NCBI RefSeq assembly: GCF_039654945.1
Contig: NW_027361990.1
Location: 124,001-188,000, forward strand
Source of the DNA: Dendrobates tinctorius
Lineage: Eukaryota
Reading direction: 5' to 3'
DNA length: 64,000 nt
Numbering within the stretch: the first letter of the stretch is position 1; each line of letters starts with the position of its first letter. The position numbers were made by a program, and so were the translations under genes. The notes beneath the pieces were generated by a model. The model had not been told where the DNA came from. It saw only the letters and a list, made by a program, of their open reading frames with translations, and made no database searches. Of the stretch, positions 4,142 through 17,250 are shown piece after piece.

Positions 4142-4187
4142 ATGTATACCGTCCTACTGAGAGCTCTGATCCTCGGCCTGGTGGCAG
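4142..4187 (+). CDS. Kazal/SPINK-like inhibitor exon 1 (signal peptide [16 protein letters not shown])
   Basis: ATG followed by a hydrophobic stretch. Strong donor CAG|GTAAGA in phase 1, compatible with the next exon. Confidence 0.75.
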
Positions 4188-7100
4188 GTAAGAGACGGTG
4201 AACATGGAAGGGCGTGCATGTGATATATTAACCAGAAATATACAGATTGCGGTATACAGAGTGCATTGTATAGACTGCGATACACACACTGCGATATATA
4301 GGCTGCGGTATACAGACTGTGGTGTACAGACTGCGATACACACACTCCTATATACAGAGCGTGATATACAGACTGTGATATACACACTCCTATATACAGA
4401 GTGTGGTATACAGAGGGCAATATACACACTTCTATATACAGAGTGCAATATACACACTTCTATATACAGAGTGTGATATACAGAGTGCAATATACACACT
4501 CCTATATACAGAGTGTGACATACAGAGTGCAATATACACACTTCTATATACAGAGTGTGGTATACAGACTGCAATATACACACTTCTATATACAGAGTGT
4601 GGTATACAGAGTGCAATATACACACTCCTATATACAGTGTGATATACAGAGTGCAATATACACACTTCTATATACAGAGTGTGATATACAGACTGCGATA
4701 TACACACTCCTATATACAGAGTGTGATATACAGACTGCAACATACACACTCCTATATACAGAGTGTGGTATACAGAGTGCAATATACACACTTCTATATA
4801 CAGAGTGTGATATACAGAGTGCAATATACACACTTCTATATACAGAGTGTGACATACAGACTGCAATATACACACTTCTATATACAGAGTGTGGTATACA
4901 GAGTGCAATATACACACTCCTATATACAGAGTGTGGTATACAGAGTGCAATATACACACTTCTATATACAGAGTGCAATATACACACTCCTATATACAGA
5001 GTGTGGTATACAGAGTGCAATATACACACTCCTATATACAGAGTGTGGTATACAGAGTGCAATATACACACTTCTATATACAGAGTGTGATATACAGAGT
5101 GCAATATACACACTCCTATATACAGAGTGTGGTATACAGAGTGCAATATACACACTTCTATATACAGAGTGTGATATACAGAGTGCAATATACACACTTC
5201 TATATACAGAGTGTGACATACAGACTGCAATATACACACTCCTATATACAGAGTGTGGTATACAGAGTGCAATATACACACTTCTATATACAGAGTGTGA
5301 TATACAGACTGCGATATACACACTCCTATATACAGAGTGTGATATACAGACTGCAACATACACACTCCTATATACAGAGTGTGGTATACAGAGTGCAATA
5401 TACACACTTCTATATACAGAGTGTGATATACAGAGTGCAATATACACACTCCTATATACAGAGTGTGGTATACAGACTGCAATATACACACTTCTATATA
5501 CAGAGTGTGGTATACAGAGTGCAATATACACACTCCTATATACAGAGTGTGGTATACAGAGTGCAATATACACACTTCTATATACAGAGTGCAATATACA
5601 CACTCCTATATACAGAGTGTGGTATACAGAGTGCAATATACACACTCCTATATACAGAGTGTGGTATACAGAGTGCAATATACACACTTCTATATACAGA
5701 GTGTGATATACAGAGTGCAATATACACACTCCTATATACAGAGTGTGGTATACAGAGTGCAATATACACACTTCTATATACAGAGTGTGATATACAGAGT
5801 GCAATATACACACTTCTATATACAGAGTGTGACATACAGACTGCAATATACACACTCCTATATACAGAGTGTGGTATACAGAGTGCAATATACACACTTC
5901 TATATACAGAGTGTGATATACAGAGTGCAATATACACACTCCTATATACAGAGTGTGGTATACAGACTGCAATATACACACTTCTATATACAGAGTGTGG
6001 TATACAGAGTGCAATATACACACTCCTATATACAGAGTGTGGTATACAGAGTGCAATATACACACTTCTATATACAGAGTGCAATATACACACTCCTATA
6101 TACAGAGTGTGGTATACAGAGTGCAATATACACACTCCTATATACAGAGTGTGGTATACAGAGTGCAATATATATACTCCTATATACAGAGTGTGATATA
6201 CAGACTGCGACATACACACTCCTATATACAGAGTGTGGTATACAGAGTGCAATATACACACTTCTAAATACAGAGTGTGATATACAGACTGCGACATACA
6301 CACTCCTATATACAGAGTGTAATATGCACACTCCTATATACAGAGTGTGATATACAGAGTGCAATATACACACTTGTATATACAGAGTGGGATATACAGA
6401 CTGCGACAAACACACTCCTATATACAGAGTGTGGTATACAGAGTGCAATATACACACTTCTATATACAGAGTGCAATATACACACTCCTATATACAGAGT
6501 GTGGTATACAGAGTGCAATATACACACTCCTATATACAGAGTGTGGTATACAGAGTGCAATATACACACTTCTAAATACAGAGTGTGATATACAGACTGC
6601 GACATACACACTCCTATATACAGAGTGTGATATACAGAGTGCAATATACACACTTCTATATATAGAGTGTGGTATACAGAGTGCAATATACACACTCCTA
6701 TATACAGAGTGTGGTATACAGAGTGCAATATACACACTCCTATATACAGAGTGTGGTATACAGAGTGCAATATACACACTTCTATATACAGAGTGTGATA
6801 TACATACTGCGACATACACACTCCTATATACAGAGTGTAATATACACACTTCTATATACAGAGTGCAATATACACACTCCTATATACAGAGTGTGACATA
6901 GAGACTGCGATATACACACTCCTATATACAGAGTGTGATATACAGAGTGCAATATACACACTTCTATATACAGAGTGTGATATACAGAGTGCAATATACA
7001 CACTCCTAAATACAGAGTGTGGTATACAGACTGCAATATACACACTTCTATATACAGAGTGCAATATACACACTTCTATATACAGAGTGTGATATACAGA

Positions 7101-10100
7101 GTGCAATATACACACTTCTATATATAGAGTGTGGTATACAGAGTGCAATATACACACTTCTATATAGAGTGTGGTATACAGACTGCAATATACACACTCC
7201 TATATACAGAGTGTGGTATACAGAGTGCAATATACACACTTCTATATACAGAGTGTGATATACAGAGTGCAATATACACACTCCTATATACAGAGTGTGG
7301 TATACAGAGTGCAATATACACACTTCTATATACAGAGTGTGATATACAGAGTGCAATATACACACTTCTATATACAGAGTGTGACATACAGACTGCAATA
7401 TACACACTCCTATATACAGAGTGTGGTATACAGAGTGCAATATACACACTTCTATATACAGAGTGTGATATACAGAGTGCAATATACACACTCCTATATA
7501 CAGAGTGTGGTATACAGACTGCAATATACACACTTCTATATACAGAGTGTGGTATACAGAGTGCAATATACACACTTCTATATACAGAGTGCAATATACA
7601 CACTCCTATATACAGAGTGTGGTATACAGAGTGCAATATACACACTCCTATATACAGAGTGTGGTATACAGAGTGCAATATATATACTCCTATATACAGA
7701 GTGTGATATACAGACTGCGACATACACACTCCTATATACAGAGTGTGGTATACAGAGTGCAATATACACACTTCTAAATACAGAGTGTGATATACAGACT
7801 GCGACATACACACTCCTATATACAGAGTGTAATATGCACACTCCTATATACAGAGTGTGATATACAGAGTGCAATATACACACTTGTATATACAGAGTGG
7901 GATATACAGACTGCGACAAACACACTCCTATATACAGAGTGTGGTATACAGAGTGCAATATACACACTTCTATATACAGAGTGCAATATACACACTCCTA
8001 TATACAGAGTGTGGTATACAGAGTGCAATATACACACTCCTATATACAGAGTGTGGTATACAGAGTGCAATATACACACTTCTAAATACAGAGTGTGATA
8101 TACAGACTGCGACATACACACTCCTATATACAGAGTGTGATATACAGAGTGCAATATACACACTTCTATATATAGAGTGTGGTATACAGAGTGCAATATA
8201 CACACTCCTATATACAGAGTGTGGTACACAGAGTGCAATATACACACTGCTATATACAGAGTGTGGTACACAGAGTGCAATATACACACTTCTATATATT
8301 GAGTGTGGTATACAGAGTGCAATATATACACTCCTATATTCAGAGTGTGGTATACAGAGTGCAATATACACACTCCTATATACAGAGTGTGGTATACAGA
8401 GTGCAATATACACACTTCTATATACAGAGTGTGATATACATACTGCGACATACACACTCCTATATACAGAGTGTAATATACACACTTCTATATACAGAGT
8501 GCAATATACACACTCCTATATACAGAGTGTGACATAGAGACTGCGATATACACACTCCTATATACAGAGTGTGATATACAGAGTGCAATATACACACTTC
8601 TATATACAGAGTGTGATATACAGAGTGCAATATACACACTCCTATATACAGAGTGTGGTATACAGACTGCAATATACACACTTCTATATACAGAGTGCAA
8701 TATACACACTTCTATATACAGAGTGTGATATACAGAGTGCAATATACACACTTCTATATATAGAGTGTGGTATACAGAGTGCAATATACACACTTCTATA
8801 TAGAGTGTGGTATACAGACTGCAATATACACACTCCTATATACAGAGTGTGGTATACAGACTGCAATATACTCACTCCTATATACAGAGTGTGGTATACA
8901 GACTGCAATATACACACTCCTATATACAGAGTGTGGTATACAGAGTGCAATATACACACTTCTATATACAGAGTGTGGTATAGAGACTGCGACATACACA
9001 CTTCTATATACAGAGTTTGATATACAGACTGCAACATACACACTCCTTTATACAGAGTGTGATATACAGAGTGCAATATACACACTCCTATATACAGAGT
9101 GCAATATACACACTTCTATATACAGAGTGCAATATACACACTTCTATATACAGAGTTTGATATACAGACTGCAACATACACACTTCTATATATAGAGTGT
9201 GGTATACAGAGTGCAATATACACACTTCTATATACAGAGTGCAATATACACACTTCTATATACAGAGTTTGATATACAGACTGCAACATACACACTCCTT
9301 CATACAGAGTGTGATATACAGAGTGCAATATACACACTCCTATATACAGAGTGTGATATACAGAGTGCAATATACACACTCCTATATACAGAGTGTGGTA
9401 TACAGAGTGCAATATACACACTTCTATATACAGAGTGTGATATACAGAGTGCAATATACACACTTCTATATACAGAGTGCAATATACACACTTCTATATA
9501 CAGAGTTTGATATACAGACTGCAACATACACACTCCTATATACAGAGTTTGATATACAGACTGCAACATACACACTCCTTCATACAGAGTGTGATATACA
9601 GAGTGCAATATACACACTCCTATATACAGAGTGTGATATACAGAGTGCAATATACACACTTCTATATACAGAGTTTGATATACAGAGTGCAATATACACA
9701 CTTCTATATACAGAGTTTGATATACAGAGTGCAATATACACACTTCTTTATACAGAGTGCAATATACACACTTCTATATACAGAGTGTGGTATACAGACT
9801 GCGACATACACACTTCTATATACAGAGTGCAATATACACACTTCTATATACAGAGTTTGATATACAGAGTGCAATATACACACTTCTATATACAGAGTGT
9901 GGTATACAGACTGCGACATACACACTTCTATATACAGAGTGCAATATACACACTTCTATATACAGAGTTTGATATACAGAGTGCAATATACACACTTCTA
10001 TATACAGAGTGTGATATACAGAGCGCAATATACACACTTCTATATACAGAGTGCAATATACACACTTCTATATACAGAGTGTGGTATACAGACTGCAAAA

Positions 10101-10346
10101 TACACACTTCTATATACAGAGTGCAATATACACACTTCTATATACAGAGTTTGATATATAGAGTGCAATATACACACTTCTATATACAGAGTTTGATATA
10201 CAGAGTGCAATATACACACTTCTATTTACAGAGTGTGATATACAGAGTGCAATATACACACTTCTATATACAGAGTTTGATATACAGACTGAAAAATACA
10301 CACTTCTATATACAGAGTGGGATATACAGACTGCGACATACACACT

Positions 10347-16659: not shown

Positions 16660-17000
16660 GCCCTATATCTGGACTCTTATACCCGAGGTCCTATAGCTGC
16701 GGCCCTATACTTGGGTTCCTTTACCTGCAGTCCTATACTTGTGGCTCCATACCTGCGGTCCTATACCTGAGATCCTATAGCTGTGGTCCAATACCTATGG
16801 TCCTATACCTGCAGCCCTGTACCTGAGGACCTATACCTGCAGCCCTGTACCTGAGGACCTATAGCTGCAGTCCTATACCTGGGGCCCTATGCATGCGGTC
16901 CTATGCCTGAGATCCTACAGCTGCAGCCCTATACCTGGGGTCTTATATTTGTGGTCCTATACCTGAGATCCTATACCTAGGGTCCTATACCTGCGGCCCC
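16660..17000. repeat. Diverged 14-bp minisatellite (ctatacctgcggtc)
   Basis: About 24 visible copies. Confidence 0.8.
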
Positions 17001-17129
17001 TGGTAAGACTGGTAATATCTCATTGGCATCACTAACATACTAACTATGTTACTATGTATGTTACTAGTTGTGTTACCAGGAGGTCTCCGCACTCACTTCC
17101 ATGTCATGTGTTATTTCTTTATATTGCAG

Positions 17130-17250
17130 CGAGCGCACAAACAAGGTCCAAATCAAAGCTGAAGGTCGCTGCCCCCCATCTGCCCAGCACAGGGGGCTGA
17201 GGCTGAAGCCGCAGCCAATTATGCAAGGAGCTGTCCACGCCGGCCCATGA
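17130..17250 (+). CDS. Kazal/SPINK-like inhibitor exon 4 ([15 protein letters not shown] plus 25-aa tail, stop TGA)
   Basis: Acceptor ttatttctttatattgcAG, phase 2. Supplies Cys6 17 residues after Cys5 (I...G.C motif). Confidence 0.85.

What the first reader, a model, noticed from the sequence alone, without database searches (positions are those of the whole stretch)
4142..17250. Complete secreted Kazal inhibitor gene hidden across 13 kb of repeats, with P1 Tyr and an unusual C-terminal tail
Four exons (4142-4187, 13948-13985, 15915-16024, 17130-17250) join with phases 1/0/2 into 104 aa: [104 protein letters not shown]. Seen: GT-AG sites, open frame, and Cys spacing 7/7/10/2/17. Established: this is the classical single-domain SPINK layout, and P1 is the second residue after Cys2. 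Here that is Tyr, which predicts chymotrypsin-type targets. Single-domain SPINKs usually end at or near Cys6, so the 25-residue Pro/basic tail is atypical. Inference: a lineage-specific secreted inhibitor, possibly of the frog skin type; the tail may be cleaved or give a second function. The two tiny 5' exons would be easily missed by annotation.
Basis: partly seen in the sequence, partly recalled or inferred. Interest (0 to 1): 0.72.

Follow-up and report, generated by a model that had tools for sequence, protein, structure and literature searches.

The report
Poison-frog Kazal inhibitor gene with tail
This is a real, intact four-exon gene for a small secreted Kazal-type protease inhibitor in a poison-frog genome; the same gene is already annotated in 17 other frogs, and its odd C-terminal tail is an old, loosely constrained extension shared by all "modern" frogs, so the finding is correct but ordinary.

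Summary
All four exons, the ATG, the GT/AG sites, phases 1/0/2 and the stop are at the stated coordinates. Exon 3 alone passes Pfam Kazal_1 (42.4 bits, cutoff 21).

- **Orthologues:** word searches found 17 annotated frog genes, named SPINK1-like, SPINK2-like, ClTI-1-like or chymotrypsin inhibitor-like. Ranitomeya imitator is closest.
- **Gene model:** four orthologous loci have the same four exons with identical splice junctions. The proximal promoter is conserved.
- **Selection:** the Kazal core is under purifying selection (pN/pS 0.08-0.26).
- **P1 residue:** P1 Tyr aligns with Leu18 of turkey ovomucoid third domain. It is fixed in most hyloid frogs but varies across the wider group.
- **Tail:** it is not a recent stop-loss. 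All 12 neobatrachian orthologues carry a 13-35 residue, net-basic tail. All five non-neobatrachian ones end at Cys6, and one origin fits the tree.
- **Tail constraint:** it is weak (pN/pS 0.3-1.0). The distal part is cut by new stop codons in Ranitomeya and Rhinoderma, and an orthologue model predicts disorder (pLDDT about 60).
- **"Frog skin type":** not supported. Skin Kazal proteins (CCKP) belong to another paralogue group.

Verdict: a new member of a known kind, of low interest. The joined 104-residue model was never submitted; exons were searched separately by reference.

The parts
3990..4141 (+). Conserved proximal promoter and 5' UTR region, with a GATA-type motif AGATAAG (4084-4090) and a TATA-like TACATATACA (4100-4109)
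   Evidence: these blocks are invariant in Phyllobates, Anomaloglossus, Ranitomeya and the distant Rhinoderma. Their function as a promoter is inferred, not shown.
4142..4187 (+). Exon 1 (coding part): ATG and the first 15 codons plus 1 nt of the signal peptide, phase 1 donor GTAAGA
   Evidence: It matches Ranitomeya at 14/15 residues. The donor sits at the identical position in four orthologous loci.
4238..10346 (.). Intron 1 satellite, 42-bp (3x14 bp) unit, about 146 copies
   Evidence: The same satellite fills intron 1 of the Phyllobates, Ranitomeya and Anomaloglossus orthologues.
11955..13922 (.). Intron 1 satellite, 14-bp unit, about 142 copies, ending 26 bp before exon 2
13948..13985 (+). 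Exon 2: end of the signal peptide and the start of the mature N-terminus, phase 0 donor GTAAGA
   Evidence: Both splice junctions are conserved in four orthologous loci.
15915..16024 (+). Exon 3: Kazal Cys1-Cys5, including the reactive loop Cys-Pro-Tyr(P1)-Glu and the VCGxDGxTYxNEC core, phase 2 donor
   Evidence: Kazal_1 42.4 bits, Kazal_2 33 bits; PDB Kazal hits, with Tyr opposite OMTKY3 Leu18; junctions conserved; pN/pS 0.08-0.26.
17130..17172 (+). Exon 4, first part: the last 14 residues of the Kazal domain up to Cys6
   Evidence: It matches the dendrobatoid orthologues at 13/14 residues.
17173..17250 (+). Exon 4, second part: 25-residue Pro-rich, net +3 C-terminal tail and the TGA stop
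   Evidence: the tail is present in all 12 neobatrachian orthologues, and the full length is shared with Phyllobates (19/25) and Anomaloglossus; pN/pS is 0.3-1.0; pLDDT is about 60 in the orthologue model.
17251..17400 (+). Probable 3' UTR. The hexamer position of the relatives' poly(A) signal reads ATTGAA (17383-17388) here, followed by TATAAA (17391-17396)
   Evidence: Ranitomeya has ATTAAA, and Phyllobates and Anomaloglossus have AATAAA, at the aligned position; there is no AATAAA or ATTAAA within 2.25 kb after the stop in the window.

Best explanation
The region holds one intact, functional four-exon gene of a dendrobatid (poison) frog. It encodes a secreted single-domain Kazal inhibitor of 104 residues, about 84 when mature.

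It is the local orthologue of an anuran-wide SPINK group that NCBI annotates in other frogs as 'ClTI-1-like', 'SPINK1-like', 'SPINK2-like' or 'chymotrypsin inhibitor-like'.

**Proposed mechanism (inferred).** It acts as a canonical standard-mechanism inhibitor. The disulphide-braced loop Cys-Pro-Tyr-Glu inserts Tyr (P1) into the S1 pocket of a chymotrypsin-like serine protease.

**The tail.** The C-terminal extension arose once in the neobatrachian ancestor. It is a flexible, net-basic appendage under weak constraint. The proximal dozen residues persist in all lineages. The distal part is dispensable, having been truncated independently in Ranitomeya and Rhinoderma.

**Shown:** gene structure, family membership, orthology, selection on the core, and the age and variability of the tail.

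**Inferred:** secretion, protease specificity, tissue of expression, and any role for the tail.
For: - **Coordinates:** exon coordinates, splice sites and phases are confirmed.
- **Family:** exon 3 passes Pfam Kazal_1 and Kazal_2 gathering scores on its own. PDB sequence hits are to ovomucoid, SPINK1/PSTI, SPINK2 and LEKTI, with Tyr opposite the P1 Leu18 of OMTKY3 and Glu opposite Glu19.
- **Orthologues:** ten, then seventeen, annotated frog orthologues were found. They match every exon, including the signal peptide and tail.
- **Gene model:** the same four exons with identical junctions occur in the Phyllobates, Ranitomeya, Anomaloglossus and Rhinoderma loci.
- **Selection:** Kazal core pN/pS is 0.08-0.26 in all 10 pairs.
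- **Promoter:** upstream blocks are conserved as far as Rhinoderma.
- **Tree:** the frog clade has support 96/95. The tail-bearing neobatrachian clade has 92/84, and one change explains the tail.
- **Structure:** the AF2 model of the Phyllobates orthologue gives a core pLDDT of 85-94 and a tail pLDDT of about 58-62. The core superposes on PSTI at TM 0.86, rmsd 1.1 A.
- **P1 Tyr precedent:** solved complexes of a Kazal scaffold carrying P1 Tyr with a chymotrypsin-like protease exist (1sgy, 2nu1).
- **P2 Pro precedent:** P2 Pro with a hydrophobic P1 is noted for avian chymotrypsin-inhibitor Kazals in PMC5965718.
Against: - There is no expression evidence of any kind. The tools hold no frog RNA-seq.
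- Signal-peptide cleavage was not run through SignalP. The only evidence is a hydrophobic core (KD mean 2.03 for exon 1) and a Val-Ile-Ala motif.
- The poly(A) hexamer that is canonical in three relatives is mutated to ATTGAA in the window. A neighbouring TATAAA may substitute for it.
- Exon 3's acceptor has a poor polypyrimidine tract.
- Specificity is inferred from P1 alone. P1 varies widely across the orthogroup (Y, H, N, L, P, R, V, M), so the target may differ between frogs.
- pN/pS values for the tail rest on 4-16 substitutions per pair.
Confidence: 0.82

Rival explanations
1. The tail carries a selected second function. It could be matrix, glycosaminoglycan or membrane binding through its basic cluster, or release of a separate peptide. 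On this reading the protein is a bifunctional inhibitor specific to neobatrachian frogs.
For: - The tail has been retained in all 12 neobatrachian orthologues since their common ancestor.
- It is always net positive, +2 to +4, and usually starts with Pro.
- pN/pS is below 1 in the deeper comparisons, 0.31-0.53.
- The last seven residues are identical in the window, Phyllobates and Anomaloglossus.
Against: - pN in the tail is 2.5-3 times that of the Kazal core, and pN/pS is about 1 in the window-Phyllobates pair.
- Length varies from 13 to 35 residues.
- New stop codons cut the distal part in Ranitomeya and Rhinoderma, while the downstream sequence is still recognisable.
- The tail is predicted to be disordered.
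- The window's tail has no dibasic processing site.
- No paper on such a tail was found.
Confidence: 0.22
2. It is a skin-secretion defence inhibitor of the PSKP/CCKP type.
For: - The organism is a poison frog.
- Frog skin secretions do contain single-domain Kazal proteins, some with a hydrophobic P1 and P2 Pro (PMC5965718).
Against: - The skin CCKP (P0080) and its Phyllobates relative (P0062) have another signal peptide. They share 3-5/15 identity with exon 1 and 18-19/36 with exon 3, and have no tail.
- They group with amniote SPINK2, outside the 96/95-supported clade that holds this gene.
- The conserved GATA-type motif in the promoter hints at gut, liver or pancreas expression instead. This is inference only.
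Confidence: 0.1
3. The gene is silent or decaying in this species, that is, a young unitary pseudogene with a still-open frame.
For: - The poly(A) hexamer that is canonical in three relatives reads ATTGAA here. No AATAAA or ATTAAA lies within 2.25 kb downstream.
- The protein is not among database gene calls.
Against: - All four exons are open and all six splice sites are intact.
- The promoter blocks are intact.
- Window-versus-relative comparisons give Kazal pN/pS of 0.12-0.26.
- A TATAAA variant signal lies 3 nt after the mutated hexamer.
- Absence from the database is most simply explained by this genome not being annotated there.
Confidence: 0.06

Closest known systems
Annotated frog orthologues: Ranitomeya imitator 'SPINK2-like' (P0001), Phyllobates terribilis 'SPINK2-like' (P0004), Anomaloglossus baeobatrachus 'pancreatic secretory trypsin inhibitor-like' (P0006)
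   Same: - The four exons and splice junctions are the same.
- The signal peptide, the reactive loop Cys-Pro-Tyr-Glu-Asn-Lys and the tail match.
- Identity is 35/36 in exon 3 with Ranitomeya.
- The full 25-residue tail is shared with Phyllobates at 19/25.
- The same satellite fills intron 1.
   Different: - There are a few substitutions.
- Ranitomeya has a stop codon where the window has Gln, eight codons before the window's stop, and a short duplication that adds an upstream ATG.
- Intron 3 is 1.1 kb here, against 6.9 kb in Ranitomeya and 9.9 kb in Phyllobates.
SPINK1 / pancreatic secretory trypsin inhibitor (PSTI) of mammals
   Same: - Both are single Kazal domains behind a signal peptide.
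- Both have four coding exons with phases 1/0/2. The human values are from my memory of SPINK1 variant nomenclature (c.55+1, c.87+1, c.194+2).
- The orthologue model superposes on PSTI at TM 0.86 and 47% identity.
   Different: - P1 is Tyr, not Lys.
- There is a 25-residue tail after Cys6, where SPINK1 ends at Cys6.
- The tree places the frog clade apart from mammalian SPINK1.
- Synteny was not tested.
Turkey ovomucoid third domain (OMTKY3) and its P1 variants
   Same: - The loop is the same canonical Kazal reactive loop.
- Tyr aligns with P1 Leu18 and Glu with P1' Glu19.
- Tyr18 variants are solved in complex with the chymotrypsin-like protease SGPB (1sgy, 2nu1).
- In Laskowski's P1 series, aromatic P1 residues are among the strongest for chymotrypsin (from memory).
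   Different: - OMTKY3 is one domain of a three-domain egg-white protein.
- P2 is Thr rather than Pro.
- It has no tail.
Frog skin-secretion Kazal proteins (PSKP-1/2, CCKPs; PMC5965718)
   Same: - They are single-domain Kazal proteins of frogs.
- Some have P2 Pro and a hydrophobic P1, with proposed chymotrypsin inhibition.
   Different: - They are a different paralogue, with another signal peptide and 39% identity to the Phyllobates orthologue P0004.
- They end at Cys6.
- They group with SPINK2.
Chicken ClTI-1 / SPINK2 (seminal acrosin inhibitor, PMC6767445)
   Same: It is the source of the automatic name 'ClTI-1-like' given to many of the frog orthologues. It is also a single-domain Kazal.
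   Different: - Amniote SPINK2 sequences fall in another group of the tree.
- It is a trypsin/acrosin-type inhibitor.
- It has no tail.

Membership tests
Kazal-type serine protease inhibitor domain (Pfam PF00050 / MEROPS I1) | Six cysteines in the pattern C-x(6-8)-C-x(7)-C-x(6)-Y-x(3)-C-x(2,3)-C-x(15-21)-C | tested here: met
   The spacing 7/7/10/2/17 was read from exon 3 and exon 4 separately. The conserved Tyr lies 6 residues after Cys3.
Kazal-type serine protease inhibitor domain (Pfam PF00050 / MEROPS I1) | Score above the curated Pfam gathering threshold | tested here: met
   Exon 3 alone scores 42.4 bits against Kazal_1 (cutoff 21) and 33 bits against Kazal_2 (cutoff 22.8), covering profile positions 1-34 of 49. 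The joined domain was not scanned, because that step was left out by instruction. All orthologues carry PF00050 and PF07648.
Kazal-type serine protease inhibitor domain (Pfam PF00050 / MEROPS I1) | Kazal fold: a short helix and a small three-stranded sheet braced by three disulphides | tested here: met
   This was tested on the Phyllobates orthologue P0004, not on the window's own joined protein. Core pLDDT is 85-94. The top PDB matches are all Kazal inhibitors, led by 1tgs_I at TM 0.86 and rmsd 1.1 A.
Kazal-type serine protease inhibitor domain (Pfam PF00050 / MEROPS I1) | Tight, substrate-like inhibition of a serine protease through the P1 residue | not testable with these tools
   This is only inferred, from P1 Tyr aligning with OMTKY3 Leu18.
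Classical single-domain SPINK gene layout (SPINK1-like) | Four coding exons, intron phases 1/0/2, with the domain split between Cys5 and Cys6 | tested here: met
   Searches confirm this for the window, and for four orthologous frog loci. The human SPINK1 exon phases are recalled from memory and were not checked here.
Classical single-domain SPINK gene layout (SPINK1-like) | N-terminal signal peptide | tested here: inconclusive
   There is a hydrophobic core (exon 1 KD mean 2.03), a helix at residues 3-19 in the orthologue model, and a Val-Ile-Ala motif before Ala-Pro. No signal-peptide predictor was available.
Orthologue of mammalian SPINK1 | Groups with SPINK1 in a tree and shares its gene neighbourhood | tested here: inconclusive
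   The tree places the 17 frog proteins in their own clade (96/95), apart from mammalian SPINK1, but it uses only 80 columns and has no reliable root. Synteny was not tested. The window's neighbour is the first exon of a fatty acyl-CoA reductase-like gene.
Frog skin-secretion Kazal proteins (PSKP/CCKP) | Shared prepro/signal sequence and clustering with the cloned skin proteins | tested here: not met
   Identity to CCKP P0080 is 5/15 in exon 1 and 18/36 in exon 3. CCKP and Phyllobates P0062 form their own starred pair (96/82) beside amniote SPINK2 sequences in a weakly supported group, outside the frog clade that holds this gene.

The most novel reading that the evidence does not exclude
The C-terminal extension could be a neobatrachian innovation with a function of its own. 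On this reading a basic, disordered anchor localises this chymotrypsin-type inhibitor to a matrix, mucus or cell surface. Its proximal basic cluster would have been kept for well over 100 million years, while the distal part drifts.
Probability: 0.2. Interest if true: 0.4.

Novelty: new member of a known kind. Interest (0 to 1): 0.2.

Why it matters
The finding gives a correct gene model for a small, repeat-buried gene in a poison-frog genome that appears to lack it in public protein sets.

It also documents a tidy small case of protein-tail evolution. The tail has one origin at the base of Neobatrachia, followed by drift, elongation and repeated truncation.

It does not open a new question. 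Kazal inhibitors, hypervariability of their P1 residue and their exon layout are textbook knowledge, and the orthologues are already annotated.

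Tried and rejected
- **Word search on exon 3 alone.** I used the natural stop-to-stop open frame around exon 3 instead (window:15819-16073:+), which adds intron-derived residues on both sides.
- **Pfam on exon 4 alone.** No hit. This is expected, since only 14 domain residues lie there.
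- **More Kazal exons or paralogues in the window.** None were found by regex or tblastn, so this is neither a multi-domain gene nor a local cluster.
- **Alternative exon 3 acceptor.** Splicing at the stronger-looking ...TTCCAG| at 15928 would read GTA TGA, an immediate in-frame stop, and would lose Cys1. Rejected.
- **Origin of the tail by stop-loss.** The sequence after the stop in Pelobates and Xenopus shows no clear similarity to the tail. The question is unresolved.
- **Literature on a C-terminal extension in amphibian Kazal proteins.** Nothing was found.
- **Earlier scan notes.** There are none on this place and none on Kazal or SPINK.
- **ZP-domain gene check.** Minus-strand ORFs were scanned for the ZP-domain gene that overlaps the Ranitomeya orthologue. 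No ZP hit was found, but short exons would not show this way.
- **Searches not run.** The large representative search was not needed after the word search. The complex prediction was skipped because a pass would not separate protease specificities.
- **Joined model.** No search, fold or look-up was made with the joined 104-residue model.

Full report
**1. Observation**

- Exon 1 runs 4142-4187. It starts with ATG and its donor is GCAG|GTAAGA.
- Exon 2 runs 13948-13985, flanked by acceptor TTGCAG| and donor |GTAAGA.
- Exon 3 runs 15915-16024, flanked by acceptor GAGCAG| and donor |GTACAA.
- Exon 4 runs 17130-17250, follows acceptor ATTGCAG|, and ends in TGA.

Lengths of 46/38/110/121 nt give phases 1/0/2.

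By instruction I did not submit the joined 104-residue model to any tool. Every search used one exon, or the open frame around it, by reference.

**2. Family**

Exon 3 alone (36 aa) passes the curated thresholds of Pfam Kazal_1 (42.4 bits against 21) and Kazal_2 (33 against 22.8). Against solved structures it matches ovomucoid, LEKTI, PSTI/SPINK1 and SPINK2.

In that alignment the Tyr after Cys2-Pro lies opposite Leu18 of turkey ovomucoid third domain. Leu18 is the P1 residue varied in the solved OMTKY3 series (titles). The following Glu lies opposite Glu19.

No second Kazal core or paralogous exon exists in the 64 kb.

**3. Relatives**

Exon 3 is under the 40-aa minimum of the word search. 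I therefore used the stop-to-stop open frame that contains it (window:15819-16073:+). It found three annotated frog proteins at E = 2e-20 to 2e-15. Profiles of these reached 10 and then 17 frog orthologues.

These orthologues cover several frog groups.
- Dendrobatoids: Ranitomeya, Phyllobates and Anomaloglossus.
- Other hyloids: Bufo, Rhinoderma, Engystomops, Leptodactylus and Dendropsophus.
- Mixophyes.
- Ranoids: Pyxicephalus, Mantella and Staurois.
- Non-neobatrachians: two Pelobates copies, Xenopus, Rhinophrynus and Ascaphus.

Their automatic names differ (SPINK1-like, SPINK2-like, ClTI-1-like, PSTI-like, chymotrypsin inhibitor-like). None of the listed proteins was marked as encoded by the window itself. 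So the gene of this species is apparently absent from the protein collection.

Ranitomeya imitator is closest: 14/15 in exon 1, 35/36 in exon 3 and 13/14 in the Kazal part of exon 4. Nucleotide identity there is about 89-92% in exons and about 80% in introns. The window therefore comes from a dendrobatid of another genus or a distant congener. This agrees with earlier scan notes that call this a poison-frog genome.

**4. The gene model is validated by comparison**

I fetched the loci of four orthologues. All have the same four exons, and all six splice junctions sit at identical positions.

About 150 bp upstream of the ATG is conserved as far as Rhinoderma. It includes an invariant AGATAAG (4084-4090) and TACATATACA (4100-4109). 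This supports exon 1 as the true first coding exon. It also hints, as inference only, at GATA-factor control.

Nei-Gojobori counts were made exon by exon and summed as counts. They give pN/pS of 0.08-0.26 for the 50 Kazal codons in all ten species pairs. That is clear purifying selection.

There is one blemish. The poly(A) hexamer is AATAAA in Phyllobates and Anomaloglossus and ATTAAA in Ranitomeya. It reads ATTGAA in the window (17383-17388), with a TATAAA three bases on.

**5. The tail**

In alignment A4 every neobatrachian orthologue continues after Cys6 for 13-35 residues. These tails usually start with Pro and always carry a net charge of +2 to +4. All five non-neobatrachian orthologues, and the outgroup single-domain SPINKs, stop at Cys6.

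I built a maximum-likelihood tree on columns that exclude the tail. The 17 frog proteins form one clade (96/95). The 12 tail-bearing ones form one clade (92/84) whose branching mirrors frog phylogeny. One change explains the trait.

So the tail is old, not a recent stop-loss.

The tail is nevertheless loosely held.
- pN in the tail is 2.5-3 times that of the core, and pN/pS is 0.3-1.0 (small counts).
- Ranitomeya has TGA where the window has CAA, yet the following codons still read like the window's last seven residues.
- Rhinoderma has TAA where the window has CAG, again with recognisable sequence beyond it.

An AlphaFold2 model of the Phyllobates orthologue used a 20-sequence alignment. It gives a core pLDDT of 85-94 and a tail pLDDT of about 58-62. 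The core matches PSTI at TM 0.86.

How the tail arose is open. The 3' UTRs of Pelobates and Xenopus show no clear similarity to it.

**6. Specificity and the 'skin type' idea**

P1 Tyr with P2 Pro is fixed in seven of the eight hyloids examined, and in the window; Dendropsophus has His. Mixophyes, outside the hyloids, also has Tyr. Across the wider orthogroup P1 varies: N, L and Y in ranoids, P and R in Pelobates, L in Xenopus, V in Rhinophrynus and M in Ascaphus. This is the usual hypervariability of Kazal contact residues.

A bulky aromatic P1 predicts chymotrypsin-type targets. Kazal scaffolds with P1 Tyr are solved in complex with a chymotrypsin-like enzyme (1sgy, 2nu1). From memory, the human PSTI variants crystallised with chymotrypsinogen (1cgi, 1cgj) carried Tyr or Leu at P1 and Glu at P1'. 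I did not verify this here.

The frog skin Kazal proteins are a different paralogue. The Cruziohyla CCKP (P0080) and Phyllobates 'SPINK2' (P0062) share their own signal peptide, end at Cys6, and group with amniote SPINK2.

**7. Context**

Intron 1 (9.76 kb) is 83% satellite. One array of 42-bp (3x14) units lies at 4238-10346, and another of 14-bp units at 11955-13922. The same satellite fills intron 1 of three other dendrobatoid genera.

The rest of the window holds many more tandem arrays, broken retroelement and hAT ORFs, and the first coding exon of a fatty acyl-CoA reductase-like gene.

**8. Verdict**

The gene is an ordinary member of an already annotated frog SPINK group.

The only mildly new point is that its tail is a neobatrachian-wide, weakly constrained extension. 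I judge the interest to be low.

I took no step that needed referral. No sequence in this work was taken for human.

Noticed in passing
window 4238-10346 and 11955-13922; L001, L002, L003 intron 1: A 14-bp-based satellite (42-bp higher-order unit) fills intron 1 here. It also fills intron 1 of the orthologous gene in Phyllobates, Ranitomeya and Anomaloglossus. So the array has stayed at this intronic position since before these genera split.
   Followed up: partly
window 4084-4109: AGATAAG (a GATA-type motif) and TACATATACA lie 33-58 bp before the ATG. They are invariant in five frog species, including the distant Rhinoderma. If the second were the TATA box, the 5' UTR would be only a few nucleotides long. 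Conserved AATAAAAG and TAATAAAT blocks further upstream are alternative candidates.
   Followed up: partly
window 17383-17396: The poly(A) signal position reads ATTGAA in the window. It reads ATTAAA in Ranitomeya and AATAAA in Phyllobates and Anomaloglossus. TATAAA follows 3 nt later.
   Followed up: partly
L002:9961-10040 (Ranitomeya imitator): A short tandem duplication around the start codon gives the annotated Ranitomeya protein an extra 11 N-terminal residues from an upstream in-frame ATG. The window has a single copy.
   Followed up: partly
L002:1-32934 (Ranitomeya imitator): In Ranitomeya the Kazal gene lies inside the span of a 979-residue ZP-domain gene on the opposite strand. No ZP hit was found among long minus-strand ORFs of the window, but short exons would be missed.
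   Followed up: partly
window 56612-56989 (+): This open frame carries the N-terminal Rossmann motif of a fatty acyl-CoA reductase-like protein (Pfam NAD_binding_4, 59.6 bits). It is probably the first coding exon of the neighbouring gene.
   Followed up: no
window 38903-42542 (+): Three long ORFs of an LTR-retroelement type lie here: gag zinc knuckle, integrase, and reverse transcriptase with RNase H. Integrase comes before RT, so the element is rearranged or two elements are nested. It is only described here and was not reconstructed.
   Followed up: no
window 60265-62306 (-): hAT transposase remnants (BED finger, DUF659, hAT dimerisation domain) are split over three frames. An integrase-core fragment also lies at 3368-3670 (-).
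   Followed up: no
window 17798-18440, 19466-19715, 21526-23260, 27406-28852, 29364-30424, 34540-36948, 43780-45257, 46422-47022, 50420-52136: There are many further tandem arrays, with units of 21-81 bp and up to 71 copies. One is a perfect 50-bp x5 array. The window is unusually rich in minisatellites.
   Followed up: no
window 24677-24763; L004:25359-25446: An 88-bp block is 83% identical to sequence about 10 kb downstream of the Rhinoderma orthologue. It is the only non-exonic match to that distant frog apart from a block in intron 3 (16255-16352). It has no open frame of note and its nature is unknown.
   Followed up: partly
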